Below, in pieces: positions 8,501 through 44,107 of a DNA stretch of 64,000 nt; the first letter of the stretch is position 1; the number at the start of each line of letters is the position of its first letter. Source of the stretch: Trichoplax adhaerens (lineage: Eukaryota > Animalia > Placozoa); the NCBI RefSeq assembly GCF_000150275.1, contig NW_002060963.1, positions 319,502 to 383,501 on the forward strand, written 5' to 3'. Made by a program: the position numbers and the translations under genes. Under the pieces are notes generated by a model. The model saw only the letters and a program-made list of their open reading frames with translations. It made no database searches and had not been told where the DNA came from.

Positions 8501-11500
8501 TATAAAGTTTGGCAACTTTACATTATTTAGTAGCTCTGTCTATGTCTTTCTGGTGGTTGCATTTACTAGGCTAGAGCAGTATTAAATATGTTTGTATAAA
8601 GATTGAATAAAATTTTAATTCTCTGTAACGTCTGAAAATTCGTAATCTACGTATTTCATCTGTCAATGATAGTAGTTACTATCTACGAGCTAATATATGA
8701 CAGAACTAGACAATAGACATTATATCGATTATGATAAATTTTAAATTATTTCTTCTCTTCTAGAATGATAAACAACTTGATGACTCGAAATTTTAAAATC
8801 AGAAGAGAAACATTTCAAGGCTTGATTAAGTTAAAATACTTGTGAGTATCAGAATTAAGCTGAATGCAAAGTTTGACTGTTACTAATATTGATATTGCTG
8901 GCATAATCTGTAACATAGATACCTTAGTTTTAACTATATTCAAGCACTCAAGAATGATAGCTTCCCTTCTCTTCATTCACTTTACGAATTGTACGTGCAG
9001 TATTTATTTTTTTAATATTGATAGCTATTAATTGGATCATAAATATATTAAATTAATATTTAATATTTGAATTTTACGCGTGTGCTTGTTTCGTAGGCAA
9101 TTGAAAGCTAATAATATTTCTACAATCGAACCATACAGCTTTATTGGATTACCAAATTTAAGAAAATTGTAAGCCATGTTGAATTTACATGCTAATATTT
9201 TTACCATGTAAAGAATCTAATGGTTCAAAAATGGTGTGCAGTAAATACTTGAATACATACATACTGTACTTTATTAAGACATACAGTTCTACGCTGTACA
9301 TTACTGTATTCCCTGACACATAATTACTGTATTTAGCTAAAATGATTACATATACGTACATTCCATAAACTGGCCATAATTTATTTATAAATAGATGATT
9401 GTTACGGTGATAGATACCATCAAGTAATAGTTTATTGTATTGATTGTTGTACATAGTTTATCATTATGATTACAGATCAGCTCATATAATGTGTTAATTA
9501 TATATTATCGGTCGGCTGTTTAAATGAATAATTCTGCCTACGTTAAAAATGGCTGTTACCTTTGAGTTATATTTAGCTTAGTCTATGTAGCTGACGCATA
9601 ATAATTGTAGGAATAGATTACTATCTGTTTTGCTGATAGTTTAGATACGTACATTATTAGCCTTAGACGATGCGAGTGTTTTTAAATGATAAACGCGAGT
9701 GATATTGCATAAAAACAAATAAATAGTTTTCACGTTAATCATAACCAATAAAGTAATCTAGTGAGTACTGTAATTTATTGCTTACATGTTAGAAGTTAGA
9801 TAGTTTGTATTATATTTGCATAGAAACTTGAGTAAAAAGTCTATAATTGTTATGAAGTACTAATCTAGAGAAATAGTTTAGATTATAGAAGATCCAAAGA
9901 CACCTTTTACTTTCTATTTGTCGCAAGATTACATACTTGTTAGGGGCGATAATAATATTTTAAATTTTATTCGTAATCGTTCTGTGATAAATTTCCTCTT
10001 AAAAATACCACAAAAACTACAATTTCTTATAAACTTCACTTTGTTATCCTAAAATTACAGGCTTGTTAGGGACGATAATAATAAATTTAATTCTATCCCT
10101 AATCATTCCTTATTTTTCTTCATCTTATTTTACCTGCCGCCTAGATCATTGGCCAGAAATAGCCTAAAGATTATTACTAGAAACTCTTTCAATACACTTT
10201 CGAATTTACAAGAACTGTATATACGAAAATATCTTGATTGACGACTATTTAAATCATCTGAGTCAAGTTGCTTGCTGCATTATAAACTTGTTATAAAGTT
10301 TTTAATTTCTTTTCATAAAACAGAAATCTAGAGTTCAACCAAATTAGTTCCATTGAAGAATACGCTTTTCTTGGCATGGTAAACCTAATTAAGCTGTAAG
10401 GAAGTATCTCGAGATACTTAAGGAATTTATTGCATTAGTTAACTTAACGGTGTAGCCGAAACGAATATACTAAATAGAGAGTAATGAGCTGCATTTTACA
10501 GATTTTTAGATTCAAATCGAATAGCAAATCTCAAAGAGAACACTTTTACTGGCTCAATAAATGTGCAAGAGCTGTAAGATGTGTGATAAATTATTAAAAT
10601 ACGGTTCTATTTACGATTAAATAAGCTCATCTCTCGTTAAATTAGGCATCTAACTGAAAATAACATCGAACAATTCGATATGAATCACTTCAATAAACTA
10701 CCATTTTTAACTTTTTTGTTAGTAGAATCCTTTATAAAGATTGTTATTACTTGTAAATTCTAGTGAAACCCGTACTTGTGGTTCTTTGAGTACTTATGTA
10801 CCAGTACTTTTTACGCTACATTATCACTGGCAGTTCGCACTGAGTACGGTATATTATATGCATATGACTTTATCTGATTATACCGAATGTACGTGTATTA
10901 TTTATTTTTCGGAAATTCTGCATTGTAAGAGATTACGGTACCTCGTAAATACTGTACTATACGGTACCTAACCGTCAGGAATAGAGAGCGAAAAACCTCA
11001 TTCGCTTTTTGTCCTAATTGCAGATTCAGTAAACACGACGTTATACATACAAATGAATTAGTAGAGCACTTGTGATATAGTTAAGAGCTAGAAATGCACT
11101 TTCAGATAATATCAACTGAGAAACAGCTATAAATTACAGCATAGTATCTCATTCTCTTTCTTTTTTGAATTAATGAGAAATTCTACTTACAATCGAACAT
11201 CAATTACCTTATATTAGTTGCAATTTTTACTAACATTTTAAATTATATTCTAATAATACATAGGGATCTTGGTTCGAATCTGTTTAAAAAATTTCAAGAT
11301 TTAAGAACTAATTACACTACACCTGCATTCAAGTATCTTCGATCAATGTAAGTGAGACAATAAAAAATTTATAAGAAATAGTGTATTAATTCATAACGGA
11401 ATCTAAATATCTTTTATTCTTAGTTATTTTAATAAATAGAAATTTTATTGAAATTATTATCTCATTTAAATAAATGTAAGAGGTATTCTATTGTATTTTT

Positions 11501-17500: not shown

Positions 17501-20500
17501 AGTAAATAGTTATCGACAAATATCTTATACAATGGCAGAGTAGTCGGAGAATTTACACGTACGTATAATTGATAATTTTGTTACCGTGGTGAGAATTTAA
17601 GCTTGTAAATCGTCGTTTGATACTATAATTAAAGCAAGTCACATCTACGTTCTGATTAGCTTAAAGTATTTATCATATTCTTTAGCCTAATGAAGATCAT
17701 AATTGAAATTTTCTAGTTTTATTCGATTTTAAAAATTAGCAAAATGAAATTAACGTAATGGAATTATTAAAATTTACGACTAATTTAGATATTTAGATAA
17801 CAATGATTTATCGGACCTCGACGAATCCCTTTTCAAAAATATGGCATTTCGGAGCTTGTTAGTACTTAATGATTACACGTTTGTTTGCTAAATTTACAAA
17901 TGAAAACTTATTTATATTCCGGATTAGCTGTATGTTTTAAAATTCAAAAATTTCATCCTGCAAATGGACTGATTGTTGCACTATAATTTCTACCTTCTTA
18001 ATTCCATACCTTATCTGTGTCATTTATAAGGGGCTTAGGCTTTAGCAAACTTTCTCCTAAAAAAGTTAATTTCATTGCGTCACTGGGTACAGATCTTACT
18101 AATCTGTAGGTAATCGTTCGCTTGAATTATTAAAACCAAGATTAGTAATAAGGTAGTCTACCTCACTTTGCTTACTGATACTCAGTATGTGCTATATCTT
18201 CATTAACAAATTTATCTAGCATTTTATCGTCTACTTAAGGCTTGCTTTTGTTTTAGATATCTAGACGGTCTTCGACTAAAGGATTTCATAAACGCTTCTA
18301 TGATTTCTAAGGAAATCCAAAATCTGTAAATGAAAATTATTTTCACAGTTTGCTACAAATCCTTTAGTAACCTACTGTAAAATGCTCTCCGAGGCTACTA
18401 TTTAGCGTTACCAATCGTAGATATCCCTGTAAACTAAATACGGTATGCTCTCATAGGTATTAGAATTAAAGCCGCTTTGTTGTGATATTGATAATGTAAA
18501 GTGAAAATACGTTACACTGTGCAGTATGTGTTAAGGCACCAAAATGTCTAAAACAGGAGTCTTTATGTAGGTAAAGACATGGGTATCTTTCAAACTGTTA
18601 GATTGTGTACAGATACTTCACCGTACAATCCGTCATAGAAAGAGTATAAAAGCCGGGTGGGAGGGTTGGGAGTAAAGAGAGACATCTCGAACCGAGATAT
18701 TCCTTATATAGCTTTTGTATTAGTAAATATTTTTAACCTATTACTCATATCTAATCTTAATCGAAATATGCTATAAAGTACCGTAAGCTATATCGTTAAG
18801 GCTTGCAATGTTGTAATCTACTTATATCTTTTAAATAATTATGCTGTATAATCATTCGCTTCTACTTAAAACATCAGATATTTAAATGATAATGATATAA
18901 GCTCCATTCATGCATCATCGGCGCCGATACTTCGTAGCCTTCAGAAACTGTAAGAACATCAAACTAGCTAACTATCGAATCTTTATGTTACCTTCATCTA
19001 TTATCTTATTCAATATTGATGACTATACTAATAAATATCTATCAAACCTTTTTTAAATATAAATTTGCTGTAGTCTAAAAGATTCTAATATTACCAGTAT
19101 CTATACTTCTAAATCTACGCATGTCTTCTGAATGCATTAAATATACATGCTTAATTTCAAATTTTTACTGAAATATTTAGGGTAATGGATCGAAATAATA
19201 TGGGAAATCAGGGATATGTGACTCTAATAACTTTAACTCCAAATCTAATACAATTGTTAGTGAAAATAAATAATTAATAAGAATACAGATGCATTTACGT
19301 TGATAACTTAAACAATACTAAAAATATTGCTATGGGTAAATGCTATTTTATGTATCTGTTTTTCTTAAATATATACTAAACGGTAAGAGTGGCACATACT
19401 ATTAATAAATACGCATAAATGTTTCAACCTATTTAATGTACCCTTTGTTATTTGAGACAGTATGCTTCGCAGATACTTGAAAATGCTAAATTTTCAATAT
19501 AGCACTACTGTTTTAGATTTAATTAACTCGTTAAAAGTTCAAACTTTTATCGATGTCTTAAATATAGGTATCTCAGCGAAAATATTATCTCCGAAATTTG
19601 TCCCAAATTTCTGTCTTCAACTGCCTTTTCAAAAATACGCTATCTGTTAGTATTCACCTTCATATACCTGATAAAGAAGATTAAGAACTGCAATTTTAGC
19701 TCCATTTCTTGTTCATACATGATGAACATTAGCAGATTTCAAAAATTGTACGGATTATAATAAATTATTATCCATAATTTGTCTATAAATGATCCACATA
19801 TGCCCAGAAATATACTACACCCTTACACATATAGTAAAATTTCGCCTTTTAAGTTCTTAATAATTCATGAATGATATTAGAACTTATGTGATTTCGAAGT
19901 TTCACCATCGGTTAGAGTATACATGTTTACTGAGTAATAGTAGCCATTTTGTAGTTATGACGATATAAAGTGTGCAGAAATATACTGGTGATATATAATT
20001 TATTTAGAATATCTAATACGTCTTTTGCATATCGAACAGGCACATAATTCTGTAATATTATCTTATACTGATAACTAATTTTATGCGACTACAGTATAAA
20101 TTAGCTAGCCTTTAATAAAAATAGGCATCAGTTTAGTCTAGAAGAGATATGCAGTTTATTATGTCCTGCTTAGGATAAAGATTGTCATTATGATAAGAGT
20201 TTTACTATGGTAGACGTAGGAGAGTACTAGCCCGACAGTAGACTTCTGGTGTGTAATTTTTTCTAATTTTTTTTACTTTTCTCGTTACCAATGTCAGCTT
20301 GTAATAACTAGTGTCTTATATTTTGTTGACAGCCTAGGTAACTATTTAATTTTATGCCTGATTCATGATTAATTTTAAGCTAGTATTAGATTTTTACAAT
20401 ATTTGACTCATTATTAACGCCTATGAAATATTTGAAAGATACATTCTACGAACATGAAATAATAATTGAATTTTAAAATTAATAGAAATCTCAATAGCAA

Positions 20501-23500
20501 TAACATCGAAAAATTAGATAGCTATTGTTTTTGGAGTATGCCAGAACTGAATTACCTGTAAGTAAAATTTTACAAACTGTAATGGCTAATGCCAATTACA
20601 CGTACCACAATTAAAACTAAGGCTAGATCTCAAAAGATAATTAACATTGGCATAAGAAGTAAGGAGATTTCAGATATCCACAATATCTGAGATACTGCTA
20701 GCAGTAAAAACTAAATTCTTATTTCACTTTCACGATTCTTTCGCAGGGCTTTGAAAGATAATCCATTAATAACTTTTAATTACCGCTCTTTCGGTGGTGT
20801 AGCAGGCATTCGAAGCATGTAAGTACGTATATATATACTAGAATCTCCTATTTTTATGTAGTTCGATATAACATCAATGACAAAGGGATGATTTAAAGAG
20901 AAGAAGTTTTCATTTAGCAGTTTGACATAGAATGCGTTTAAGACTTTTGTACTTTCATCCATGTACATTTCAAGCATAACAAATAAAATTTCACGATTTC
21001 TTAATACTTTACTTTTTATTTATTGCACGTTATGATTTATTACCGGATGTACAATGTTGACGTATCTGTCACAAACTTCCGTGTGACAAGACAACGTTGT
21101 GATCGAATCTACGATCTCGCAATAATTTGTACGCCTTCGATTTACGTTATACTTCTAACCTTAGGAACTAAGAACTAACTTTTATTAATTTGTCCAATCG
21201 TTTAAATAGATTTTATCTACAAGCTTTTACACACCTCTTAGAATACTACTAATCCAACTATAGATATAAATGACCTTTAACACATCACAATTTAAATCGT
21301 ACCGTCAACAATCTATATCTGGTTACGTACTCGCTTACAATATCATTGTAGCCGCAAGGCATGTACTAATTTGGTATGGTGAGTTAGTACCGTGACAGTA
21401 TCATATTTGAATTACAAGTATATTATAAGTATAAGAATCTGAAAGGTTTCTCTAATTAGATCAAGCCGAATCTATATTTTTTGAGAACGTTTTACAGCTC
21501 AAGAGTCAGATCAACCAAACTTCTAAAGACTTAATTCTAAGTACTATAAGTGAAGATATAAAAAAGATAACGACAGAACTGAAACTGTCTACAACCATAC
21601 AACCTAATAAAAGGAAGAACGTCTTTACTTACAACAGTTCGACCCCGAAAGCCGTTGAAATTCAACAAGTTCTTCAAAAGAATCTTCTTACACTCTCTAC
21701 TCTAAATTTTCTGATTGCACTATCATGCACTATCATGTACAGAGTCTACAACGAGTATGATCAGACTACTATTAAAATTACAATTAGCTAGTAGCTAATA
21801 AATAAGGGTTATCAACAATAACTATGTAATGTAACTTAGTATTGTGATTGTAGACTGTTATCCATGTTTAGTTAAATATACGGTAGATATTTATCCTAAG
21901 AGATATTTGGTAGCTATAGCTATAGACTGTAGTGGTATAGACTCTATGCTAGAGTATAGATGACTATATACAGTAAGGTGTTGAGTTACTAATAAGATTA
22001 TAGGTAAAAATAGAACTGTAAATCATATATTAGGATATGGTTAATTTATTGTACTTTGGCTGGTGTGAATAATGTCTACATAAATACTGTAGTAGTATCC
22101 ATATCGGATTAATGATGGTCCGCAGTAGAATAGTCTTACTAAGAATAATTTAACTATGTGTAAAATAAGGTAAAAGGTTGCCGCGCGGATTGTAGCTGCG
22201 AATGCTACGAAAAATATAAAGCATGCAACTTTAGATTATTCTGTTAGTTCGTTCTAGAAGTCTTTAGTAGTAGTATTCGGCTAGAGTAGAACTGTATGTA
22301 GTTAATCTTTGTATAAGATTTAATAGAGCCTTATTTTTCTAAAATTTGGAATTTCGTGATTGATATATATCACAAACTAATAAAGGGTTATCAACAACTA
22401 ATAAAAGTTTATCAACAACAACTAAAAATCTTAGTTGATCACACTGAAGCTACGATAAACTCTTGGGAGTCTGCACTCCGTCATACACCTGCTTCTAAAA
22501 TTTATTTATTAATAAATTAAAATATTGATAAGAAAGGGCATCGATTCCATGGTGTATTTTGAAGTAGTTACATGCTAAATAAAATATTTAAAACAGAATA
22601 AATTTACTTACGTATTTTAGCACAAAACTACTTTACGAATTTATTAGCGCTGTAACGTGGAAAGGAAAAGTTCCCATATTTTCCCCAAAATGATATAACA
22701 AAACTATAATCATAAATTTCCCTGAAAGTTAATGCTACTCCCTACTTGCTGGAAGTCTATTCACAGCTTATGCTAGATGTTGAGTTCACACAATTAACTA
22801 TTTTTTAATGGATATTTAAATTCAATACAATCCATTTTCAATACATTGATTTTAATAATTTATTTAATTTATAAAACGTTGAATCACTGGTAATATAGCC
22901 TTGAAATACCTATTTCCTTCTAATTTAAATTGTCCTTCGTCTATTAACTATAGACATTCGACACGTGAATACTTATGTTGCGTTGCGCCATCCTCAATAA
23001 TTGTATGCAGACCAAATCCGAATCAATTTAGCCTATCTACATGCTTTAATATTTTGGCTCATGATTTATTGCGTGTATTTATCTGGGCAATTGGTATAAT
23101 TTCAGTCGTTGGTAACACGGTTTCTATAAGATGGCATTCTCAAAAAAAATCTGCTAAAAGACTCGGAATAGTAGAAATGTTATTAATTAACTTATCGACT
23201 GCGGATTTTATCATGGGTATCTACCTAATTATCATAGCATCAGCCAATGTATATTATGCAAACCGTTATTATGAAGTTTTTGAAATATGGCTACGTAGTG
23301 TGCCATGTCTAATGGCCTCGTTTTGTATCTCATTATCGAGCTTAATGTCGACATTTGTGCTCTTTCTAATAACTCTAGATCGTTATCTGCACCTAGTTTA
23401 TCCTTTTCAAAATTATCGTTTTTCTATTAAATTTACTTTCCTAGCATTGGTGGTTCTTTGGTTAATATCAATTGCATTAGTTGGATTACCAATTATTTAT

Positions 23501-26199
23501 AGTATTAATCAACCGTCAATTAATCGTCTATACTCTAGCAATAGTGCATGCTTACCTGGTAATTTTAATAACCCATTTTTATTAACATGGCTATTATGTT
23601 ATGCTGGATTAACCTTCGTCGTTTGGATTTTTATTGCAATCATGTATGCCGCAATTCTATCGACATTAGCAAATTCAAGCAAAGAAACTCATAGACGTTT
23701 ATCAAAGAATGATAAAATTGTTCGCGCTAAAATGATTACTATCGTAGCAACGGATTTAATCTGTTGGCTACCATTATATATANNNNNNNNNNNNNNNNNN
23801 NNNNNNNNNNNNNNNNNNNNNNNNNNNNNNNNAGAAAGCAGTACATAACGATTACATTTACGCGTTAATACGATGAAGTATATACTTTATTTGAGTAACA
23901 CCAAGGTAATTTCCATCTAGATATTTATACCAGCTCGATTCATCCATCACATGTCATTGCAATTTCCAGTAACCCTGATCTATCTAAGGTAAAATCCTTT
24001 TTATAAGATTTGCTATCTTTTATTGAAAACTATCAACTATCTTGGCTTGGCAGGGCTAATTTTAAAATCTTTCAGCAATATCCAACACAATCATAAATTT
24101 CTTTCGTCCAATTTTCGCTTTAATTACTGCACAATCTAAACTGGATCAATAGCATTTACTGTGCGTTACTCCGTATAATGACTATTGTTAGATAGAAAGT
24201 ATCGGTATGATATTCATGCAATGAGCGAAACAAGTGCACAAGGCGATTGCATGATATAAGTAGCCCTTTCTTTATAATATAAATTGTAGAGTAAATTATT
24301 ATAATATTTAAGGGAGATGCAGTTCCATCAGTAAGAAATATTTTTTTACAAATTAATTAATTAATGAATTATAAATCCAACTAGTCTAATGTTCACGTTG
24401 CCAGCACAATAGCTAAAATTACTAAAATTACATTATATTTTGCTAAGAATTTCAAACGGTATAGGCATATCATTTATTTACTGTAATAAATATTATCTAG
24501 CACCGGTTGTACAGAACAGTTATGTTAAGTGAGATTCGCGAAAAGCTCTTACAAGTATTTAACTTTGATGCAAGGTTTACATTAAAGTCAAATTACCTCA
24601 TAATTGCGGAGTGAATAATTTGGGGTGGCTGCAGCTTTACAACGCAAAAGATAACTTGCCTTGGGAAAAAGAGATATCATTTTATACATACATCAAATCA
24701 AAAGACTGTAAATTAAAGAATATTATGGGTTGTTTGTGGTACTGTAAAGGAAACGAATGTAGAATCGAAATAGATGGTGGCGAGAAGCTGTTTCCGGATA
24801 AATTGTAGGTCGTATGTTTTCAGTTTTCATAAGGAGTTATGTACATTCTGTATTTATACAGGTATATTTACAAGATATATCCTTTTTCGCAGTATAACCT
24901 GTTTTACAGCAGACGCCAATGACATTATGCTTCTGAGCAATTCCATCCGTTTGCAATCCGATTACCTGACATCACATCGGATTCTGCAAATTAGTATGAA
25001 TATTATACAAGCAATTCAATCTTTGCACCTGAATAATATAGTCCATGGATCAATAAATACCGATGCTGTTATTCTACTTATTTCGCCGAAGGTACATAAT
25101 AGCATATTTAAAGACAGATATTCAAGCGATAATATAACAATCCTGAAATATTTAAGTTCTATTAGTTTATTTTGATCATGCCTATAATTTGTGCATGGTT
25201 TGCCTACAAAACTAATATCTTCATTAATTTACTTGAATGTAGTCTATACCAATGGTATCAATCAATATAAGAATGGGCCATTAAATAATTCTTACTATGA
25301 TTAATCTACTTATAAAATAAATTTAGAATTAGAAATTTATAGATTCACGTATATCGTTTTCGTTTCAAATACAATGTAGAAATATTGTATCGCTACTAAA
25401 AATTAGAAGTAGTCAATAAATTTCAGAGATACAATTCTGGTCATTCGAATATCATCCTTATTACGAATTAGTCGAATTTCTATTACTGTTTATAGCGCTA
25501 CTATCTTTCCTTTATCGAAAAGTCATGATATAAGTGATAAATTATTACTTGTTTAAACTTATATATCTAGGAATCGATTACCGCCTTATTAGGCGTATTT
25601 TCAAATACGACGATATTTGAAAACGATCTTCACGAAATGCACAGAAATCGATACCGTCAATTAATGAAAACAGATATTTCTGACTTTGCGTTATTGTGCA
25701 GTGAATTAAGTTCATACTGCCAAACAATAATCGATCAAATCAATGAGAGCCAATTGCAACCAGATAAAGTGATGCAGGCTAGCGAAGGTATTGAATCTTG
25801 GAGATCGGTAAACGAGAAAGTAAGTATCTACTTTAATAAACTGCATTAACTGTACGTAGTTGACTTCTAGCGACAAGTGCTTAACGAAAGCAGTAATGAT
25901 ATAACTAAACCTTGAGTAATACAAGTATATTGTAAGGTAGTAAAACAGTAATCGCTATCGTAAACTGTTATATTGTACTCGTATGTCCATAACTAGTTGC
26001 ATTGACGTATAGCGATTGCTCTAAATGCTAATAATATTACGAAGCTATAATAGATTCTTTGATATTCATTAATCTAGTAAAAAATTTATCAAATTTTTAG
26101 TTACGTATTGTCAAAGATGCCATCGATGATCAATTACAGGAAAATAGAGAACCAAAGCAAATTTTAGCTGATCTATGGGCCATTACTAGTGGTGACTAA
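2539..26199 (+). CDS. Multi-exon LRR-containing rhodopsin-class GPCR (LGR/GRL101-like) with a C-terminal pseudokinase domain; copy 1, 5' end not seen
   Basis: 40 phase-2/phase-2 LRR exons of 66-84 nt start at 2539, 2959, 3544, 3925, 5942, 7119, 7665, 7998, 8764, 8919, 9097, 10145, 10324, 10502, 10646, 11264, 11511, 11786, 12004, 12307, 13314, 13532, 13723, 13893, 14871, 15027, 16064, 16235, 16575, 16832, 17013, 17401, 17789, 18031, 18257, 18878, 19181, 19568, 20486 and 20747. The hinge+7TM exon runs from 22954 into the gap at 23783. Then exons 23921-23988, 24575-24804, 24893-25091, 25571-25819 and 26101-26199 (TAA). Phases are compatible throughout; the 7TM-to-tail junction is inferred from copy 2. 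Confidence 0.8.
4335..4964 (-). mobile_element. Solo-LTR-like element, family A long form (630 bp)
   Basis: TG...CA ends (TGTCAC...GTCACA); flanks caatg/caacg (4/5 TSD); reverse complement aligns along its length with 12558-13185. Confidence 0.8.
6270..6807 (+). mobile_element. Family B element, degenerate copy
   Basis: Aligns with the reverse complement of 21825-22374 and with 36820-37382; no clear TSD. Confidence 0.75.
12558..13185 (+). mobile_element. Solo-LTR-like element, family A long form (628 bp)
   Basis: Starts TGTTAC; exact CTCAG TSD (12553-12557 and 13186-13190); homologous to 4335-4964 and shares internal blocks with 32323-32763; 3' end degenerate. Confidence 0.8.
21067..21397 (-). 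mobile_element. Solo-LTR-like element related to family A (331 bp)
   Basis: TGTCAC...GTGACA termini; GTATC TSD; empty site in copy 2 near 29490. Confidence 0.88.
21825..22374 (-). mobile_element. Solo-LTR-like element, family B (550 bp)
   Basis: TG...CA ends; AACTA TSD; absent from copy 2 (empty site near 29918, inside a short tandem repeat). Confidence 0.88.
22954..23782 (+). CDS. Hinge + 7TM exon of LGR-type GPCR (copy 1)
   Basis: Hinge YLCC...C..NQFSLSTCFNIL; TM1 IWAIGIISVVGN; TM2 INLSTADFIMGIYL; TM3 ITLDRY; TM6 IVATDLICWLP. These are LGR/relaxin-receptor-like signatures. Acceptor ctatag ends at 22953. Confidence 0.95.
23921..26199 (+). CDS. Intracellular pseudokinase exons of the LRR-GPCR (copy 1)
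   Basis: Spliced product IYTSSIHPSHVIAISSNPDLSK|VYIKVKL...LGWLQLYNAKDNLPWEKEISFY...LKNIMGCLW...|...IIQAIQSLHLNNIVHGSINTDAVILLISPK|ESITALLGVFS...KTDISDFALLCSEL...|LRIVKDAIDD...WAITSGD*. Kinase subdomains occur in canonical order, with catalytic residues replaced. Confidence 0.75.
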
Positions 26200-29400: not shown

Positions 29401-32400
29401 TTCAAGCATAACAAATAAAATTTTACGATTTCTTAATACTTTACTTTTATTTATTGCACGTTATGATTTATTATCGGATGTACAATGTTGATATATCATA
29501 TTTGAATTACAAGCATATTATAAGTATAAGAATCTGAGAGGTTTCTCTAATTAGGCCAAGCCGAATCTATATTTTTTGAGAACGTTTTACAGCTCGAGAG
29601 TCAGATCAAACAAACTTCTAAAGACTTAATTCTAAGTACTGTAAGTGAAGATATAAAAAGGATAACGACAGAACTGAAACTGTCAACCACCATACTACCT
29701 AATAAAAGGAAGAACGTCTTCACTTACAACAGTTCGACCCCGAAAGCCTTTGAAATTCAACAAGTTCTTCAAAAGAATCTTCTTACACTCTCTACTCTAA
29801 ATTTTCTGATTGCACTAGCATGCACTATCATGCACAGAGTCTACAACGAGTGTGATCAGACTACTAATAAAATTGCAATTAGCTAGTAGCTAATAAATAA
29901 GGGTTATCAACAATAACTAATAAAGGGTTATCAACAACTAATAAAAGTTTATCAACAAATAAAAATCTTAATTGATCACACTAAAGCTACGATAAACTCT
30001 TGGAGTCTGCACTCCGTCATACACCTGCTTCTAAAAAACTTATTTATTAATAAATTAAAATACTGATAAGAAAGGGCATCGATTTCATGGTGTATTTTGA
30101 AGTAGTTACATGCTAAATAAAATATTTAAAACAGAATAACTTTACTTACATATTTTAGCACAAAACTACTTTACGAATGTATTAGCGTTGTAACGTGGAA
30201 AGGAAAAGTTCCCATATTTTCTCCAAAATGCTATAACAAAACTATAATCATAAATTTCCCTGAAAGTTAATGCTACTCCCTACTTGCTAGAAGTCTATTC
30301 ATCAGCTTATGCTAGATGTTGAGTTCAAACAATTAACAATTTTTTAATGGATATTTAAATTCAATATAACCCATTTTCAATTCATTGATTTTAATAATTT
30401 ATTTAATTTATAAAACGTTTTATTACTGGTAATATAGCCTTGAAATACCTATTTCCTTCTAATTTAAATTGTCCTTCGTCTATTAACTATAGACATTCGA
30501 CACGTGAATACTTATGTTGCGTTGCGCCATCCTCAGTAATTGTATGCAGACCAAATCCGAATCAATTTAGCTTATCTACATGCTATAATATTTTGGCGCA
30601 TGATTTATTGCGTGTATTTATCTGGGTAATTGGTATAATTTCAGTCGTTGGTAACACAGTTTCTATAAGGTGGCATTCTCAAAAATATTCTTCTAATAAA
30701 TTTGGAATAGTAAAAATGTTATTAATTAATTTATCGACTGCGGATTTTATCATGGGTATCTACCTAATTGTCATTGCATCAGCCAATGTATATTATGCAA
30801 ATCGTTATTATGAAGTTTTTGAAATATGGCTACGTAGTGTACCATGTTTAACGGCCTCGTTTTGTATCTCATTATCGAGCTTAATGTCGACATTTGTGCT
30901 TTTTCTAATAACTCTTGATCGTTATCTGCACCTAGTTTTTCCTTTTCAAAATTATCGCTTATCTACTAAAACTACTATCCTAGCATTGGTAGTTCTTTGG
31001 TTGATATCAATCACATTTGTTGGATTACCAATTCTTTATAGTATTAATCAACCGTCAATTAATCGTCTATATTCTAGCAATAGTGCATGCTTACCTGGTA
31101 ATTTTAATAACCCATATTTATTAACATGGCTATTATGTTATGCTGGATTAACCTTAATCGTTTGGATTTTTATTGCAATCATGTATGCCGCAATTCTATC
31201 GACATTAGCAAATTCAAGTAAAAAAACTCATAGACGCTTATCAAGGAATGATAAAATTGTTCGCGCTAAAATGATTACTATTGTAGCAACGGATTTAATA
31301 TGTTGGCTACCACTATATATAGTATTAATTCGAGGTTTTGGTTTTGGATTAGACACGCATTCACTACCATTTATCGCTGTGTTATCATTGCCACTAAATT
31401 CATGTATCAATCCGATCATTTATACGCTCTTTACAACTACCTTTATCNNNNNNNNNNNNNNNNNNNNNNNNNNNNNNNNNNNNNNNNNNNNNNNNNNTGC
31501 TTTGGAAGTTAAATTGCTGTTCATGTTTAACATTCTTTCGATCAATTCGTAAGTCAACTCAAGGCAGTCAGCCCCAAAGGAGTAAGTTAAGATCTAGTTT
31601 TAAAGTAAAGTGATTAATGTACTTCTGACGCCTTATTAAATGAGAGTTCTATAACTGTTAAGTAGTAACATATATCTTAACAACAAGTAAGCAGTACATA
31701 ACGATTACATTTACGCGTTAATACGATGAAGTATATACTTTATTTAAGTAACACCAAGGTAATTTCTATCTAGATATTTATACCGGCTCGATTCATCCAT
31801 CACATGTCACTGCAATTTCCAGTAACCCTGATCTATCTAAGGTAAAATCCTTTTTATAAGATTTGCTATCTTTATTAAAAACTATCAACTATCTTGGCTT
31901 TGGCAGGGCTAATTTTAAAATCTTTCAGCAATATCCAACACAATCATAAACTTCTTTCGTCCAATACTCGCTTTAACTACTGCATAATCTAAACTGGATC
32001 AATAGCATTTACTGTACGTTACTCCGTATAATGACTATTGTTAGATAGAAAGTATCGGTATCATATTCATGCAATGAGTGAAACAAGTGTACAAGGCTAT
32101 TGCATGATATAAGTAGCTCTTTCTTTATAACATAAATTGTAGAGTAAACTATTATAATATTAAAGGGAGATGCAGTTCCATCAGTAAGAAATAGTTTCTT
32201 ATAAATTAATTAATGAATTAATTATAAATCCAATTCGTCTAATATTCACGTTGCCAGCACAATAGCTAAAATTACTAAAATTACGTTATATTTTGCTAAG
32301 ATTTTCAAACGGTATAGGCATATGTCACGGTACGAACTACCGTGAAGAAATAGCCATCTGAATCTGGTTAATATAATATAGTGATAATGTATTACAACTA

Positions 32401-34498
32401 GTTACTTATAGTAGGAATTACTCTAATTATAAATGTGCTACAGTAAATTTAATGCTGTGCTGTAATGTGTACTGAAATGATTCTGTGAATGGACACATAT
32501 TGTAGTCCGACTGTGAAAAACTAGTTAGTAGATGTTCTCCTATGTATTTTTATAAGACGACTTGTGAATGTTAGCTGCTGTAGAAGGGTATATAAGCTCG
32601 TCAGATAGTTGAATAAAGCAGTTCTCAATTGTCTAGCTGAGTTTAACGTAGAATCAAAGGCGTTTAATTCTTGTGAGGTAGTTAAGGGATACTAGATCCC
32701 GGAAACTAATAGTAATTTAGAGATTTGTTTACGTTATCCTTGTCACGAAGCTGGTTTGTGACAGCATATCATTTATTTACTGTGATAAATATTATCTATC
32801 ACCGGTTGTTCAGAACAATTATGTTAAGTGAGATTCGCGATAAGCTCTTACAAGTATTTAACTTTGATGCAAGGTTTATATTAAAGTCGAATTACCTCAT
32901 AATTACGGAGTGAATAATTTGGGGTGGCTGCAGCTTTACAACGCAAAAGATAACTTGCCTTGGGAAAAAGAGATATCATTTTATACATACATCAAATCAA
33001 AAGACTGTAAATTAAAGAATATTATGGGTTGTTTGTGGTACTGTAAAGGAAATGAATGTAGAATCGAAATAGATGGTGGCGAGAAGCTATTTCCGGATAA
33101 ATTGTAGGTCGTATGTTTTCAGTTTTCATAAGGAGTTATGTATATTCTGTATTTATACAGGTATATTTAGAAGATATATCCTTTTTTCGCAGTATAACTT
33201 GTTTTACAGCAGACGCCAATGACATTATGCTTCTGAGCAATTCCATCCGTTTGCAATCCGATTACCTGACATCACATCGGATTCTGCAAATTAGTATGAA
33301 TATTATACAAGCAATTCAATCTTTGCACCTGAATAATATAGTCCATGGATCAATTAATACCGATGCTGTTATTCTACTTATTTCGCCGAAGGTACGTAAT
33401 AGCATATTTAAAGACAGATATTCTAACGATAATACAACAATTCTGAAATATTTAAGTTCTATTAGTTTATTTTGACCATGCCTATAATTTGTGCATGGTT
33501 TGCCTACAAAACTAATATCTTCATTAATTTACTTGAATGTAGTCTATGCCAGTGGTATCAATCAATATAAGAATGGGTCTTTAAATAATTCTTACTACGA
33601 TTAATCTACTTATAAAATAAATTTAGAATTAGAAATTTATAGATTCATGAATATCGCTTTCCACTCAAATACAATATAGAAATACTGTATCGCTACTAAA
33701 AATTATTAGTAGTCAATAAATTTCAGAAAACAATTCTGGTCATTCGAATATCATCCTTATTACGAATCAGTCGAATTTCTATTACTGTTTATAACGCTAC
33801 TATCTTTCCTTTATCGAAAAGTCATGATATAACTGATAAATTATTACTTGCTTAAATCTATATATCTAGGAACCGATTACCGCCTTATTAGGCAAATTTT
33901 CAAATACGACGATATTTAAAAACGATCTTCATGAAATATACAGAAATCGATACTGTCAATCAATGAAAGCAGATATTTCTGACTTTGCATTATTGTGCAA
34001 TGAATTAAGTTCATACTGCCAAACGCAAATCGATCAAATTAATGAGAGCCAATTGCTACCAGATAAAGTGATGCAGGCTAGCGAAGGTATTGAATCTTGG
34101 AGATCGGTAAACGAGAAAGTAAGTATCTACTTTAATAAACTGCATTAACTGTACGTAGTTGACTTCTAGCGACATGTGCTTAGCGAAAGCAGTAATGATA
34201 TAACTAAACCTTAAGTAACACAAGCATATTGTAAGGTAGTAAAACAGTAATCACTATCGTAAACTGTTATATTATACTTGTATGTCTATAACTAGTTGCA
34301 TTGACGTATAGTGATTGCTCTAAATGCTAATAATATTACAAATCTATAATAGATTCTTTGATGTTCATTAATCTAGTAAAACATTTATCAAATTTTTAGT
34401 TACGTATTGTCAAAGATGCCATCGATGATCAATTACAGGAAAATAGAGAACCAAAGCAAATTTTAGCTGATCTATGGGCCATTACTAGTGGTGACTAA
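26478..34498 (+). CDS. LRR-GPCR-pseudokinase, copy 2 (last 7 LRR exons, 7TM, pseudokinase); 5' part not seen beyond the gap
   Basis: LRR exons 26478-26552, 26704-26772, 27325-27396, 27627-27701, 28014-28091, 28920-28991, 29181-29252. 7TM exon 30493-31548 spans a gap, includes TM7 LPLNSCINPIIY, and in the frame LWKLNCCSCLTFFRSI ends at a phase-1 donor. Tail exons 31774-31841, 32874-33103, 33193-33391, 33870-34118, 34400-34498 (TAA). Splice sites are conserved with copy 1. Confidence 0.82.
32323..32763 (+). mobile_element. Solo-LTR-like element, family A short form (441 bp)
   Basis: TGTCAC...GTGACA; GCATA TSD; internal TATATAA and AATAAA; empty site in copy 1 near 24465. Confidence 0.92.
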
Positions 34499-35374
34499 AA
34501 GGATTTCATAGCCTACTCATCACTAAGTGTACCGAATAGTGTGAATTGATCATTCCCAATAATTAATCCCTGATGATACAATAGCCTGAAAATTAAAATA
34601 GAAAATCGAACTCAGTAAGAATGATGAAAATAACTTGTGACTCGAGTTTGTGCTTTTCTTAAATATAGCTTTAACAATGAGAGTAGTTCATTAAATCTAT
34701 AGTGTTATGGATATTTGACCAATGTCTGAATACACTGGTAGATTTCTATTTCCGTAAACGGTTATATTTATCATAGCAATTTTACTATAATAATATTAGA
34801 AAGTAAGTACTGTCCTTTACCTTTCGGATAGTATCGTTCACTCGGCTTAGGACAAGGTCAGTGATGAATGACCTAGAGAACTCTGGTAACTTCCCCGATA
34901 AAATTGTAATTAAAAAAAAAACATACAAACTGCTATATTGCTTGCGAGCAATGTTTTGCTGCCTTAATTGATTTCAAGAGTCTATGATAGGAACATTTAA
35001 TTACATTTATCGTCTTGTATATGATAAATACATATCCCAGTAATTATATAAAGTTTAGCATTGACATATGTGTAAGGGCACTGAAACCAATTTAAATCGT
35101 GATACTCTTGCTAATAAACTTCGTTCTTTCAATTTTGAAGCTCTCATATAAAAATTTCACATGTGTAATGTTCTCGTCTCCTTAAAAAGAGTTTACCGGT
35201 AAAATTTAAACTAGTGCACATCAATAAAATCTTTATATGCTTCTGTTGTGCTTGTAGGGACTTTGATGCACCCATCGAGGCATCTTGTATTCTCACTTAA
35301 GGCTAAAACTATCGTTTCTAAAACTATTCATTGACAGTACTCGACTATTCTAACGTCTAAATGTAATATTCTTG

Positions 35375-36819: not shown

Positions 36820-37382
36820 TATGATAAAATCCGATCACGAAAAATTCCAAAGTTGTAGAAAATTAGAACTTTATTAGATCTAATACTAATGACTAGTCAC
36901 ACACAGCTCTACTCTAGCCAAACACAACTACTGAAAGACTTCAAGAAAGAACAATCAGATAATCTAATATCTCCTGTTTTTAAACTCCTCGTAGTCTTCA
37001 GATCTACAATCAGCATAGCCGCATTCTAGCATATTTTACACATAATCAGCTTATTATTAATCACTATATTTTAAAGCGAACCATCGTTAATCTAATATAG
37101 AAATGATTTCAGTATTTTCATAGACATTATTCCTACACTCAAAGTTCAATGAACTGAGCATATTCTAATATATGATTTACAATACTATTTCTACTTCTAT
37201 CCTTATTAGTAGCTCAACATCATACCGTATATAGTCATCTATACTCTGGCACAGAGTCTATCCTTACAGTCTATAATTATGGGCTACTAAATATATCATA
37301 AGATAAATATAGAAAAGACACTACTGTACATCATACAAAACTTAGCTAATAGTCTACAACCACAATACTAAGTTACTTTACA
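36820..37382 (+). mobile_element. Family B element
   Basis: Same internal blocks as 6270-6807; flanks gctac/gctgc. Confidence 0.8.
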
Positions 37383-37766
37383 GCTGCGTAACACAGTAAA
37401 TCATTTTAAGGGTATATCTTGCAACAGTGTACTCCATATCAGTATTAGAATTATCAATTGGTCAATAGCAAAATTTATTTATTCATTCTTGAGATATATT
37501 TTGCAATAGTAGTACGCACTACTCATCAGTATTCTAATAAATATGTCACCACGTTCAATTTCTGAATAAAAGATATATAGATGTGCTTTGAATATATCGA
37601 TTATGACACTGGCTTAGAGGACATTTTTTCTGCACGTTTATTTGAGCGGGAGATATTCTAGTATTTATAGTAAAATTTGTTTCAGTACTGTAGCTGTAAT
37701 AAATTCTTCTAACTGTATGTAAGTGTGTTAGGATCTAGTTAGTTCATCGCAATTTAGCTTGTAAAA

Positions 37767-38037
37767 ATAATGTCTACATAAATACTGTAGTAGTTACCAT
37801 CTAGGATTAAGAGTGGTCTGCCGTAAAATGTTCTTACTTATAATATTTTGATTACGTGTGAAATGAGGTAGAATATTGCTATGCAGATAGTAGCAGCAAA
37901 TGTTACTAAGAGTCCGGTATTTAAGCGGGTAACTTTAGCTTATTCAGTCGTTCTTTCCAGAAGTATTTCTAGCAGTTAAAATCGGCTAGAGTTCTGATTT
38001 TTTTAAATTTTGGAAATTTATGATCGATTGTATCACA
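37767..38037 (-). mobile_element. Family B fragment (duplicate at about 42510-42782; other fragments at about 39713-39881 and 60248-60330)
   Basis: Partial matches to the family B sequence (aataatgtctacataaatactgtagtag; tactgtatatagtcatctgtact). Confidence 0.65.
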
Positions 38038-41710: not shown

Positions 41711-42271
41711 TATGATAAAATCCGATCACGAAAAATTCCCAAATTGTAGAAATTAGAATTTTATTAGATCTAATACTAATGACTAGCTACATACAACTCT
41801 ACTCTAGCCGAACACAACTACTGAAAGACTTCTAGAAAGAACAATCAGATAATCTAATATCTCCTGTTTTTATACTCCTCGTAGTCTTCACATCTACAAT
41901 CAGCATAGCCGCATTCTAGCATATTTACACATAATCAGCTTATTATTAATCACTATAATTTACAGCAAACCATCATTAATCTAATATAGAAATGATTACA
42001 GTATTTTCATAGGCATTATTCCTACACTTAAAGTTCAATGAACTGAGCATATTCTAATATATGATTTACAATACTATTTCTACTTCTAACCTTATTAGTA
42101 GCTCAACATCATACTGTATATAGTCATCTGTACTCTAGCACAAAGTCTATCCTTACAGTCTATAAATATGGGCTACTAAATATATCATAAGATAAATATA
42201 GAAAAGACTTTACTGTACATCGTCCAAAACATAGCTAATAGTCTACAACCACAATACTAAGTTACTTTACA
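41711..42271 (+). mobile_element. Family B element (same insertion as 36820-37382, in the duplicate block)
   Basis: Exact GCTAC TSD (41706-41710 and 42272-42276). Confidence 0.82.
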
Positions 42272-43736: not shown

Positions 43737-44107
43737 ATACTACCATCTGAAATTACTTGGAAATTGAACTTCTAACATTTTAGTATTCGCTAAGCTTAAA
43801 TTATTATACGCTTGCTACGGAGTTTTATTACTTGTATGGATCGTCAAATAACTACATCTGCTGACCCAGTCTCAGTATTTGCTCGTAGCTCAAGGTACTC
43901 TAATAAAAACTTTATTGATATATTTACGATCTAGTTTCTATATTGTTTGTATTTTCTTCACCAGATTCCAATAGAAAATCTGCACTATCAAACAGCCAAC
44001 CTAAATAGCAAGCAACAAATTCTAACTGATTTGTTAGCGTTCAAATCTTCATAAGTATCGAATCAAATTTGGGTTCTATATCGCAACTGGCTGATACATA
44101 ATCCATG

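What the first reader, a model, noticed from the sequence alone, without database searches (positions are those of the whole stretch)
22954..26199. LRR-GPCR fused to a C-terminal pseudokinase: an apparent LRR-7TM-pseudokinase receptor in an animal
Seen: after TM7 and a Cys-rich tail (LWKLNCCSCLTFFRSI, read in copy 2 after a gap), five phase-compatible exons run to a single stop in both copies, with no separate start exon evident. Their product follows the protein-kinase fold in order: beta2 VYIKVKL; beta3 LGWLQLY (VAIK Lys absent); alphaC PWEKEISFY (Glu kept); LKNIMGCL (cf. LRHENILGF); alphaE IIQAIQSLHLNNIV; catalytic loop HGSINTDA (HRD Asp and Asn lost); ALLGVFS/ALLGKFS (DFG lost); a short activation segment without APE; alphaF KTDISDFALLCSEL (Asp kept). 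No Gly-rich loop is present. The WxxExxxY...NIxG stretch recalls TGF-beta-receptor/TKL kinases. Established: characterised animal LGRs (glycoprotein-hormone receptors, LGR4-6, RXFP1/2, GRL101) end in tails with no kinase fold; 7TM-kinase fusions are known mainly from oomycetes and amoebae. Inference: a receptor with plant LRR-RLK-like logic (LRR sensor outside, kinase fold inside) built on a 7TM scaffold, in which the dead kinase acts as scaffold, allosteric switch or decoy. The divergent, spliced domain would be easy for automated annotation to miss.
Basis: partly seen in the sequence, partly recalled or inferred. Interest (0 to 1): 0.92.

Follow-up and report, generated by a model that had tools for sequence, protein, structure and literature searches.

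The report
LRR-GPCR with fused pseudokinase tail
In the placozoan Trichoplax adhaerens, two tandem copies of a hormone-receptor-type (LGR) G-protein-coupled receptor gene carry a catalytically dead protein-kinase domain spliced in frame behind the seventh membrane helix, an architecture I found in no paper on animal rhodopsin-class receptors.

Summary
The window is Trichoplax adhaerens scaffold DNA with two tandem gene copies that are 93-98% identical. In each copy, five GT..AG exons follow the 7TM exon in compatible phase and end at one stop.

Spliced contigs of public RNA runs show all five junctions. They also close the copy-2 gap with 24 in-frame bases. The true first donor is 31581, not 31548.

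The copy-1 gap (23783-23832) hides about 330 bases: the end of TM6, TM7, helix 8 and the first donor. Continuity there is inferred only from copy 2 and from a gap-free third copy.

The tail of about 280 aa is a protein-kinase fold. Profile searches hit kinases (PDB E 2e-5; hhalign 95.6%). An AlphaFold model of a paralogue matches kinases only (Z 14-15, with TGF-beta and activin receptors on top).

The catalytic Asp, catalytic Asn, DFG Asp and loop glycines are lost. In this gene the beta3 Lys is lost as well, so the domain is a pseudokinase.

About 15-20 loci in the genome share the 7TM-plus-tail order. Tail dN/dS is 0.30.

Public gene models already contain the fusion (Trichoplax sp. H2 "GRL101-like"), but Pfam misses the domain, and no searched paper describes it. 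This scan had already found paralogues of the family on other DNA of this genome (s1-733971, s1-734984).

The signalling mechanism, most likely a scaffold or allosteric module, is inferred.

The parts
22954..23782 (+). Copy 1, hinge + 7TM exon: Cys-rich hinge and TM1 to mid-TM6. It is cut by the assembly gap.
   Evidence: The AG acceptor lies at 22952-53. The copy-2 equivalent scores 7tm_1 E 2e-24. DRY (LDRYLHL) and CWLP are present.
23783..23832 (.). Assembly gap in copy 1. It hides about 330 bases: the end of TM6, TM7, helix 8, the Cys cluster, the first donor and the start of intron 1.
   Evidence: The flanks align to copy 2 at about 31321 and about 31687. The gap-free copy L035 shows what lies between.
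23921..23988 (+). Copy 1, tail exon 1: linker end plus beta1 and a glycine-less 'G-loop' (..HVIAISSNPDLSK).
   Evidence: AG/GT sites, phase 1 to 0. The homologous copy-2 joints appear in X7.
24575..24804 (+). Copy 1, tail exon 2: beta2, beta3 (WLQLY, with Lys replaced by Gln), alphaC (WEKExxFY) and beta4.
   Evidence: The profile's only PDB hits are TGFBR2, aligned at beta2-alphaC-beta4.
24893..25091 (+). Copy 1, tail exon 3: beta5, hinge, alphaD, alphaE and the degenerate catalytic loop IVHGSINTDA.
   Evidence: The profile hits PDB kinases at E 2e-5 to 1e-3. The library search gives 368 hits. hhalign probability is 95.6%.
25571..25819 (+). Copy 1, tail exon 4: ALLGVF (DFG equivalent with the Asp lost), a short activation segment without APE, alphaF (DISDF) and following helices.
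26101..26199 (+). Copy 1, tail exon 5: last C-lobe helix and stop TAA at 26197-26199.
30493..31581 (+). Copy 2, hinge + 7TM exon through NPIIY, helix 8, the KLNCCSC Cys cluster and a Ser/Thr-rich linker, ending at donor 31581|GTAAGT. It contains the gap 31448-31497, whose true length is 24 nt plus edge.
   Evidence: 7tm_1 E 2e-24. An X7 contig enters the exon at 30493 with 369 upstream letters. The gap is bridged in X1, X4 and X7, and the joint 31581|31774 is seen.
31774..31841 (+). Copy 2, tail exon 1.
   Evidence: Joints 31581|31774 and 31841|32874 in X7. Phases.
32318..32764 (.). A dispersed repeat of about 445 bp, inserted in intron 2 of copy 2 only. It is not part of the gene product.
   Evidence: Depth is about 1e5 in X1, and some contigs skip it. 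The genome holds at least 483 candidate copies; the 40 scored are 92-94% identical.
32874..33103 (+). Copy 2, tail exon 2.
33193..33391 (+). Copy 2, tail exon 3.
   Evidence: One X7 contig spans 32907-33103|33193-33389.
33870..34118 (+). Copy 2, tail exon 4.
   Evidence: Joints seen in X7 and in the RNA-seq run X12.
34400..34498 (+). Copy 2, tail exon 5 with stop TAA at 34496-34498.
   Evidence: Joint 34118|34400 in X7 and X12. Translation.

Best explanation
Each copy encodes one polypeptide with these parts, in order:
- a long LRR ectodomain and a Cys-rich hinge;
- a rhodopsin-class 7TM of the LGR type, closest to LHCGR, TSHR and RXFP1, with DRY, CWxP and NPxxY intact;
- helix 8 with a palmitoylatable Cys cluster;
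- a flexible Ser/Thr-rich linker of about 40 aa;
- a domain of about 270 aa with the bilobal protein-kinase fold.

The kinase-fold domain cannot catalyse by the canonical route:
- HRD is HGS.
- The catalytic Asn is Ala.
- DFG is LLG.
- The G-loop has no Gly.
- The activation segment is short and lacks APE.
- In this gene the beta3 Lys is Gln.

All of the above is shown here.

Inferred: the tail is a membrane-tethered, non-catalytic docking or allosteric module. Ligand binding to the LRRs changes the 7TM conformation or oligomeric state. That in turn changes the exposure or pairing of the pseudokinase, which recruits or regulates a cytoplasmic partner, for example an active TKL-type kinase or an adaptor. 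This would act alongside G-protein coupling.

The gene belongs to a placozoan subfamily of about 15-20 loci that expanded by tandem duplication.

My odds: architecture 0.93; non-catalytic 0.85; scaffold or allosteric output rather than pure self-regulation about 0.5.
For: Fusion of 7TM and tail:
- All five GT..AG junctions appear in spliced contigs, with no intron coverage in X7. The last two also appear in the RNA-seq run X12.
- Phases fit in both copies.
- A gap-free third copy has an open frame from TM7 to the donor.
- In 10 of 12 divergent paralogue loci on 9 scaffolds, a 7tm_1 exon (55-62% identity) is followed on the same strand by exons 2, 3 and, in most, 4 in order.
- Public models P0153 (LRR_8 2.4e-12, 7tm_1 1.1e-24, full tail) and P0009 hold the fusion.

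Kinase fold:
- The exon-3 profile hits only kinases in the PDB once the repeat artefacts are set aside (CDKL3 2e-5, STK4, RAF1, KSR1).
- The same profile gives 368 hits in 1.84 billion proteins. The three long ones scanned with Pfam are bona fide multi-domain kinases, and two shorter ones show HRD and DFG.
- hhalign of the tail family against real kinases gives probability 95.6%, E 1.2e-8.
- The AlphaFold2 model of paralogue P0003 has pLDDT 75 and pTM 0.72.
- Foldseek gives at least 500 matches at E <= 0.001; all rows listed are kinases.
- VIA-align gives Z 14-15 over 185-206 residues.
- In an exhaustive search of 48,161 chains, all top 50 are kinase folds, with TGFBR1 and ACVR2 first.
- The tail of P0009 folds with pLDDT of about 86-96.
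- The nearest ESM-Atlas clusters are all Pkinase, score 0.96.

Dead catalytic site: residue counts are.

Selection: dN/dS is 0.30 for the tail against 0.24 for the 7TM.

LGR identity: phmmer against the PDB gives LHCGR and RXFP1 at 1e-35.
Against: - The junction evidence comes from short Logan contigs laid at 90% likeness or better, so it is not resolved by copy and there is no single full-length read. Joints 31581|31774 and 31841|32874 each rest on one X7 contig.
- The JGI model of the third copy (P0151, TRIADDRAFT_61227) reads through the first donor and stops in the intron, so a tail-less isoform is not excluded.
- The window's own spliced tail was not folded.
- Pfam kinase hits stay below the gathering score (20.9 against 23.1 bits for P0009; E 0.037-0.11 for this gene's subgroup).
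- The exon-4 profile finds no kinase.
- No partner, ligand or G-protein coupling is known. The signalling mechanism is inference by analogy with HER3, KSR, JAK JH2 and the kinase-homology domain of receptor guanylyl cyclases.
Confidence: 0.78

Rival explanations
1. The tail is an intramolecular regulator rather than a partner-recruiting scaffold. It would dock on or near the cytoplasmic face of its own 7TM, or shield the phosphorylatable linker, and gate G-protein or arrestin access. This is how the kinase-homology domain gates receptor guanylyl cyclases and how JH2 gates JAK JH1.
For: The tail is tethered by only about 40 flexible residues behind a membrane-anchoring Cys cluster. The 7TM keeps DRY, CWxP and NPxxY, so G-protein coupling is probably the primary output. 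Tail and 7TM are under similar constraint.
Against: The AlphaFold2 model of the full 7TM+tail protein P0009 gives pTM of only 0.53 although both domains are confident. It therefore shows no confident inter-domain packing, which is weak evidence given the shallow alignment. No test of binding could be run, because complex prediction was unreachable.
Confidence: 0.25
2. The kinase-like exons are not part of the receptor in vivo. Either the receptor ends at the in-frame stop just inside intron 1, as in the JGI model TRIADDRAFT_61227, or the tail is a separate gene.
For: Read through the first donor, the frame stops after 10 more codons. P0151 is modelled that way. Tail-only gene models exist (P0002, P0003).
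Against: X7 contigs join 31581 to 31774 and 31841 to 32874, with depth in the 31532-31685 bin equal to exon-only coverage and none in the other introns. No start exon is seen. The order and strand are conserved at about 15-20 loci. The H2 model P0153 carries LRR, 7TM and tail together.
Confidence: 0.05
3. The tail is an atypical but active kinase or nucleotide-dependent switch that uses non-canonical residues, as WNK, CASK and SelO do.
For: The alphaC Glu is invariant and the beta3 Lys is kept in 8 of 10 paralogues. One paralogue (C1404:1078788) keeps HGD...N. This suggests that a nucleotide pocket could persist in some members.
Against: The DFG Asp is absent in 9 of 9 and the HRD Asp in 13 of 14. 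The catalytic Asn is absent in 12 of 14. The G-loop of this gene's subgroup has no glycine. This gene also lacks the beta3 Lys.
Confidence: 0.07
4. The two window copies are assembly duplicates or decaying copies, and only other family members are functional.
For: The copies are 93-98% identical, introns included. There are gaps in both, further near-identical copies on a 13-kb scaffold (C1288), and a neighbouring pseudogene with stops (L034).
Against: Both copies keep open exons and consensus splice sites. They differ by a transposon insertion and by scattered substitutions, so they are not the same DNA assembled twice. Contigs identical to copy 2 occur in RNA (X7 record 27). dN/dS against the C1357 copy is 0.30.
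Confidence: 0.1

Closest known systems
Leucine-rich-repeat GPCRs (LGRs): LHCGR, TSHR, FSHR, RXFP1/2, LGR4-6, Lymnaea GRL101; the 46 T. adhaerens LGRs of Hauser et al. 2022 (PMC9545775)
   Same: It has an LRR ectodomain, a Cys-rich hinge and a rhodopsin-class 7TM with DRY and NPxxY. The best PDB matches are LHCGR and RXFP1 at 1e-35. The H2 orthologue is named 'GRL101-like'.
   Different: Known LGRs end in short or unstructured tails. This clade carries a folded kinase-like domain of about 270 aa on five extra exons. The review that counts 46 LGRs never uses the word kinase. Other Trichoplax LGR-like receptors (33-40% identity in the 7TM) have long low-complexity tails without any kinase signal.
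7TM-kinase fusions: oomycete and amoebozoan GPCR-kinase 'bigrams', GPCR-TKL/K of acanthoecid choanoflagellates, GPCR-TK of sponges (PMC12716839)
   Same: A protein-kinase-fold domain is fused to the C-terminus of a 7TM receptor. That paper argues such fusions arose repeatedly and independently.
   Different: Those fusions carry kinase domains that Pfam/InterPro detects, and their 7TMs are not LGR-type. That paper recovered GPCR-TKs, among metazoans, only in sponges. Here the 7TM is a metazoan LGR, the ectodomain is a giant LRR array, and the kinase domain is catalytically dead and below Pfam's threshold.
TGF-beta/activin/BMP receptor Ser/Thr kinases (STKR family, TKL group)
   Same: TGFBR2 gives the only PDB sequence hits of the N-lobe profile, aligned strand for strand from beta2 to beta4 and including W..E..(I/F)Y and the xNI motif. 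TGFBR1 and ACVR2 are ranks 1-2 of the exhaustive structure search. ACVR1, ACVR2A and TGFBR1/2 are among the top Z scores.
   Different: E is 0.21 and the Z scores are tied within 1 of IRE1, SYK, EGFR and RIPK, so the affinity is suggestive only. There is no activin-receptor ectodomain or GS box, the catalytic residues are lost, and the activation segment is far shorter.
Receptor-borne pseudokinases: HER3, ROR/RYK/PTK7, the kinase-homology domain of receptor guanylyl cyclases, JAK JH2, and plant pseudokinase receptor-like kinases such as NFR5 (LysM type) and BIR2 (LRR type)
   Same: A dead kinase fold sits on the cytoplasmic side of a ligand-binding surface receptor. STRADalpha, NFR5, IRAK3, ULK4 and JAK2 JH2 all appear among the structural matches. 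This supplies the working model of a scaffold or allosteric partner. Its sensor-outside, kinase-fold-inside layout matches that of plant LRR receptor kinases.
   Different: All of those are single-pass or soluble proteins. None is built on a 7TM GPCR scaffold.

Membership tests
LGR (leucine-rich-repeat GPCR, rhodopsin class) | Rhodopsin-family 7TM with DRY / CWxP / NPxxY | tested here: met
   7tm_1 E 2e-24 on the copy-2 exon. LDRYLHL, ICWLP and NPIIY are read.
LGR (leucine-rich-repeat GPCR, rhodopsin class) | Extracellular LRR array joined to the 7TM by a Cys-rich hinge | tested here: met
   LRR exons lie directly upstream (20500-20558 and 20747-20818, read). An X7 contig splices 369 upstream letters onto 30493. 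P0151 and P0153 join an LRR exon to HSTREYLCC. P0153 scores LRR_8 at 2.4e-12. The full ectodomain is the subject of note s1-749487 and was not re-counted here.
LGR (leucine-rich-repeat GPCR, rhodopsin class) | 7TM closest to glycoprotein-hormone or relaxin receptors | tested here: met
   phmmer of P0153 against the PDB gives LHCGR 1.2e-35, RXFP1 1.3e-35 and TSHR 3.7e-35.
Protein-kinase-like fold (ePK superfamily) | Bilobal fold: five-strand N-lobe with alphaC, helical C-lobe with alphaE/alphaF | tested here: met
   This rests on paralogue models, not on this gene's joined product. Foldseek E 4.8e-6, with all rows listed being kinases. Z 14-15. The window's exons align to the modelled paralogue at 28-33% identity.
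Protein-kinase-like fold (ePK superfamily) | Significant sequence homology to kinases | tested here: met
   Exon-3 profile against the PDB gives 2e-5. hhalign probability is 95.6%, E 1.2e-8. The library search gives 368 hits.
Protein-kinase-like fold (ePK superfamily) | Pfam Pkinase / PK_Tyr_Ser-Thr above the gathering score | tested here: not met
   P0009 scores 20.9 bits against a cutoff of 23.1. P0153 gives E 0.11. The window's exon 3 gives E 0.037. This is why annotation carries no kinase domain.
Catalytically active protein kinase | GxGxxG loop | tested here: not met
   The loop before beta2 reads ..ISSNPDLSK in both copies.
Catalytically active protein kinase | beta3 Lys (VAIK) paired with alphaC Glu | tested here: not met
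   The window gene has Gln (WLQLY). Lys is kept in 8 of 10 paralogues. The alphaC Glu is invariant, 10 of 10.
Catalytically active protein kinase | HRD Asp and catalytic-loop Asn | tested here: not met
   The loop reads IVHGSINTDA. Across the family, Arg is Gly in 13 of 14, Asp is kept in 1 of 14 and Asn in 2 of 14. The mapping comes from hhalign.
Catalytically active protein kinase | DFG Asp and APE-ended activation segment | tested here: not met
   ALLG(K/V)F, with Asp absent in 9 of 9. Only about 22 residues lie between it and alphaF, with no APE.
TGF-beta receptor (STKR) kinase family | Kinase domain groups with the STKRs | tested here: inconclusive
   The only PDB hits of the exon-2 profile are TGFBR2, but at E 0.21. 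Ranks 1-2 are STKRs, but within 1 Z of others. A search of the organism's own genome for a link found only a chance Lys-rich match.
TGF-beta receptor (STKR) kinase family | Single-pass receptor with activin-receptor ectodomain (and GS box in type I) | tested here: not met
   The N-terminal part is LRR + 7TM. No such Pfam domain is found.
GPCR-TKL/K and GPCR-TK (choanoflagellates, sponges) | 7TM and kinase domains cluster with those families | not tested
   Their sequences were not at hand. The paper states that their 7TMs cluster with no other eukaryotic GPCRs, and that no metazoan outside sponges was recovered. The 7TM here is LGR-type, so independent origin is likely.

The most novel reading that the evidence does not exclude
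The tail is a descendant of a TGF-beta/activin-type receptor kinase. It would still pair with an active type-I-like or other TKL kinase, so these LGRs would feed a ligand signal sensed by a giant LRR array directly into a receptor-kinase (SMAD-like or TKL) pathway. That would be a GPCR acting as the non-catalytic partner of a receptor-kinase complex. In an animal without canonical Toll-like receptors, the tandemly expanding family might serve pattern or self/non-self recognition.
Probability: 0.12. Interest if true: 0.9.

Novelty: new variant of a known kind. Interest (0 to 1): 0.72.

Why it matters
LGRs are textbook GPCRs, and the 46-member placozoan expansion has been discussed only in terms of hormones and G proteins. 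A clade of about 15-20 of them carries a conserved, expressed and selectively constrained pseudokinase. This means early animals combined the two great receptor logics, 7TM and receptor kinase, in one protein.

The finding extends 7TM-kinase fusions, so far reported among animals only in sponges, to rhodopsin-class receptors and to Placozoa. It gives a natural system in which to ask how a GPCR can drive a kinase-fold scaffold.

It also shows that a whole domain can stay invisible in public proteomes because it scores just under Pfam's threshold and because some gene models stop in the first intron.

Tried and rejected
- **TALE hits.** The top PDB hits of the exon-3 profile are TALE repeat proteins. 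I rejected them: the scores are sums of many 2-6-bit matches to 'LTPEQVVAIA', and no single stretch is significant.
- **Exon-4 profile.** Against the PDB it gave nothing meaningful.
- **STKR link within the genome.** After the family members, the best exon-2 profile hit in the organism's own genome (C1412:807528, E 0.027) is a Lys-rich chance match, not a kinase.
- **Word-index searches.** The search for homologous proteins on the tails of P0009 and P0153 returned only the queries themselves. Because of the tool's length and word limits, this says nothing about absence.
- **LRR regex.** A strict LRR regular expression over the window was too insensitive, because each repeat is split by introns.
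- **Literature.** The supplements of PMC9545775 hold no accession numbers that could map these genes to 'Tadh-LGR' names. No paper combines placozoa + pseudokinase + GPCR. The two papers with Trichoplax + GRL101 turned up only in the search listing and were not read for the tail.
- **Complex prediction.** A homodimer test of the tail of P0153 could not be reached in five tries, so there is no result.
- **Joined model.** Exons were searched one by one by reference, and public models of paralogues and orthologues stood in for the whole tail.
Full report
**What the window is.** GC content is about 30%. The assembly has 105.6 Mb in 1,414 contigs. A paralogous gene model is TRIADDRAFT_60495 on a contig of exactly the length of G000:C1400. 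The organism is therefore Trichoplax adhaerens, and the window is C1394:319502-383501. The region holds two tandem units of about 8.3-8.4 kb (about 17.9-26.3 kb and 26.3-34.6 kb), 93-98% identical with introns included. A third copy lies just upstream of the window (L035). Near-identical copies lie on a 13-kb scaffold, and a 79% copy on C1357.

**Gaps first.**
- In copy 2, contigs of three runs bridge 31447 to 31506 with 24 letters. The gap-free third copy has the same 24 letters. These are 8 codons, so TM7 (NPIIY) continues in frame into helix 8, a KLNCCSC cluster and a Ser/Thr-rich stretch.
- In copy 1, the gap 23783-23832 stands for about 330 missing bases. By homology these are the end of TM6, TM7, helix 8, the first donor and the start of intron 1. 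Continuity of copy 1 cannot be read from this assembly and is inferred from the other copies only.

**Are the tail exons part of the receptor?**
- I laid four public runs on 30300-34900 (4,601 letters).
- Run X7 behaves as clean RNA, with no depth in introns 2, 4 and 5. The depth in the bin 31532-31685 equals what exon-only coverage predicts.
- X7 shows GT..AG joints 31581|31774, 31841|32874, 33103|33193, 33391|33870 and 34118|34400. The declared RNA-seq run X12 shows the last two.
- An X7 contig also enters the 7TM exon at 30493 carrying 369 upstream letters, so the exon is spliced to upstream (LRR) exons.
The phase is the same.
- Translated exon by exon, all exons of both copies have AG/GT sites, compatible phases and a single stop.
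- Read through the first donor, the frame stops 10 codons later. The JGI model of the third copy (P0151) ends that way, so a minor tail-less isoform cannot be excluded.
- Caveat: the contigs are short, were laid at 90% likeness or better, and cannot tell the copies apart. Two joints rest on one contig each.

**Comparative support.**
- Exon 3 finds 21 places in the genome. Its profile finds 20 strong places and then a gap down to E 4e-4. The exon-2 profile finds 18.
- In 10 of 12 divergent loci (32-47% identity in exon 3) on nine scaffolds, a 7tm_1 exon of 55-62% identity lies 1-4 kb upstream on the same strand, followed by exons 2, 3 and, in most, 4 in order.
- The 7TM search shows a clean break. 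The tail-bearing clade is at 54% identity or more, and about 45 other LGR-like 7TM exons are at 33-40%. Sampled members of the second group have long low-complexity tails and no kinase signal.
- Public models hold the fusion. P0009 (697 aa) has 7tm_1 plus tail. P0153 (Trichoplax sp. H2, 'GRL101-like, partial', 747 aa) has LRR_8, LRR_4, 7tm_1 and a tail with exactly these exon borders.
- dN/dS between copy 2 and the C1357 copy is 0.30 for the tail and 0.24 for the 7TM, so the tail is constrained like the receptor.
- One neighbouring copy (L034) is a pseudogene with stops.

**Is the tail a kinase fold?**
- Pfam alone says no. The best score is 20.9 bits against a threshold of 23.1.
- A profile of exon 3 from 14 paralogues hits only protein kinases in the PDB once the spurious TALE repeats are set aside. 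These include CDKL3 at 2e-5, STK4, MAPKAPK3, RAF1, KSR1, PAK1 and VRK3, all aligned at alphaD/alphaE to the catalytic loop.
- The same profile finds 368 proteins among 1.84 billion. The first are fragments of the family; among the rest, every one I checked is a genuine kinase (three by Pfam, two by their HRD and DFG motifs).
- hhalign of the tail family against a set of real kinases gives 95.6% probability, E 1.2e-8, and maps IVHGS onto IVHRD.
- The exon-2 profile has only three hits in the whole PDB. All are the TGF-beta type II receptor kinase, aligned beta2-beta3-alphaC-beta4, though at E 0.21.
- The language-model atlas puts the tail of P0153 next to Pkinase clusters (score 0.96).
- AlphaFold2 of a tail-only paralogue model (P0003, aligned with exon-wise rows that include the window's exons) gives pLDDT 75 and pTM 0.72.
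- Foldseek then finds at least 500 matches at E <= 0.001, and every row listed is a kinase.
- VIA-align gives Z 14-15.2 at 3.2-4.2 A over 185-206 residues.
- In an exhaustive comparison with 48,161 chains, all top 50 are kinase folds. TGFBR1 (Z 14.4) and ACVR2 (13.9) come first, and several pseudokinases follow (STRADalpha, NFR5, IRAK3, ULK4, JAK2 JH2).
- The full 7TM+tail model of P0009 folds both domains confidently, with a disordered linker and pTM 0.53, so no confident inter-domain packing is seen.

**Why it is a pseudokinase**.

| Position | State in the family |
|---|---|
| G-loop | No glycine in this gene's subgroup (exon 1 seen in both window copies, L033 and P0153) |
| beta3 Lys | Gln in this gene; Lys in 8 of 10 paralogues |
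| alphaC Glu | Invariant |
| HRD | H-G-x: Arg is Gly in 13 of 14; Asp kept in 1 of 14 |
| Catalytic Asn | Kept in 2 of 14 |
| DFG | (L/V/R)-L-G in 9 of 9 |
| Activation segment | About 22 residues, without APE |
| alphaF Asp | Kept in 8 of 9 |

**How it probably works.**
- Shown: the polypeptide has, in order, an LGR-type LRR ectodomain, a hinge, a 7TM with intact coupling motifs, helix 8 with a Cys cluster, a flexible linker and a dead kinase fold.
- Inferred: the tail is a tethered docking or allosteric module whose exposure or pairing follows receptor activation or dimerisation, by analogy with HER3, KSR, JAK JH2 and the kinase-homology domain of receptor guanylyl cyclases.
- The main rival is a purely intramolecular gate on G-protein or arrestin access. 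I could not test binding, because complex prediction was unreachable.

**Known or new?**
- The LGR expansion in Trichoplax (46 genes) is published, but that review never mentions a kinase.
- A 2025 survey reports 7TM-kinase fusions in oomycetes, amoebozoans, acanthoecid choanoflagellates and, among animals, sponges only.
- No paper in the library combines placozoa, pseudokinase and GPCR.
- The fused gene models are public, so what is new is recognising the domain and the clade. I class it as a new variant of a known kind.
- This scan had already reached the same conclusion on two paralogous loci elsewhere in this genome (s1-733971, s1-734984). My counts (about 15-20 loci) and my reading agree with them, and I re-derived both here.

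Noticed in passing
window 32318-32764: A dispersed repeat of about 445 bp sits in intron 2 of copy 2 only. The genome holds at least 483 candidate copies. The 40 scored are full-length and 92-94% identical, which suggests a young non-autonomous transposable element. Read depth in run X1 is about 1e5. No terminal inverted repeats were found.
   Followed up: partly
window 52302-57491, minus strand: An Apaf-1/NLR-like gene. Its exons score CARD (1.7e-5), NB-ARC (3.7e-4, below threshold) and the APAF-1 helical domain (2.8e-9).
   Followed up: partly
L034 = G000:C1394:261500-271499: A further copy of the same receptor gene, about 50 kb upstream of the window, is a pseudogene. It has in-frame stops in the 7TM exon and in tail exons 2, 3, 4 and 5.
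   Followed up: partly
L035 = G000:C1394:303500-311900; P0151 and P0009: Two public T. adhaerens models look mis-built. TRIADDRAFT_61227 reads through the first tail donor and stops in the intron, so it lacks the tail. TRIADDRAFT_60495 contains an extra 32 aa between tail exons 2 and 3; AlphaFold leaves residues 462-502, which hold them, disordered, and no paralogue has them.
   Followed up: partly
L019 / L031 = G000:C1404:1078788-1078958: One paralogue keeps the least degenerate catalytic loop (IVHGDISMDN: Asp and Asn present) but still has LLG in place of DFG. It would be the first member to test for residual nucleotide binding.
   Followed up: no
L038 (Logan contig of run SRR30664516, 1,796 bp): A genomic contig with an exon-3-like piece (59% identity) and an exon-4-like piece (41% identity) about 630 bp apart. 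GC is 33%. The organism is not known to me.
   Followed up: partly
window 397-2150 vs 9458-11204; 37035-39163 vs 41924-44821: The window holds further pairs of direct repeats at 92-97% identity, with periods of about 9.06 kb and about 4.7-5.7 kb. The first pair lies inside the LRR-exon region of copy 1, which suggests an internal duplication of the ectodomain. The second pair was not examined.
   Followed up: no
window 24521-24614 and 32821-32913: An ATG-led open frame of 30 aa (MLSEIRxKLL...) overlaps the acceptor of tail exon 2 in another frame. No read evidence supports its use as a start exon, since X7 splices 31841 to 32874.
   Followed up: partly
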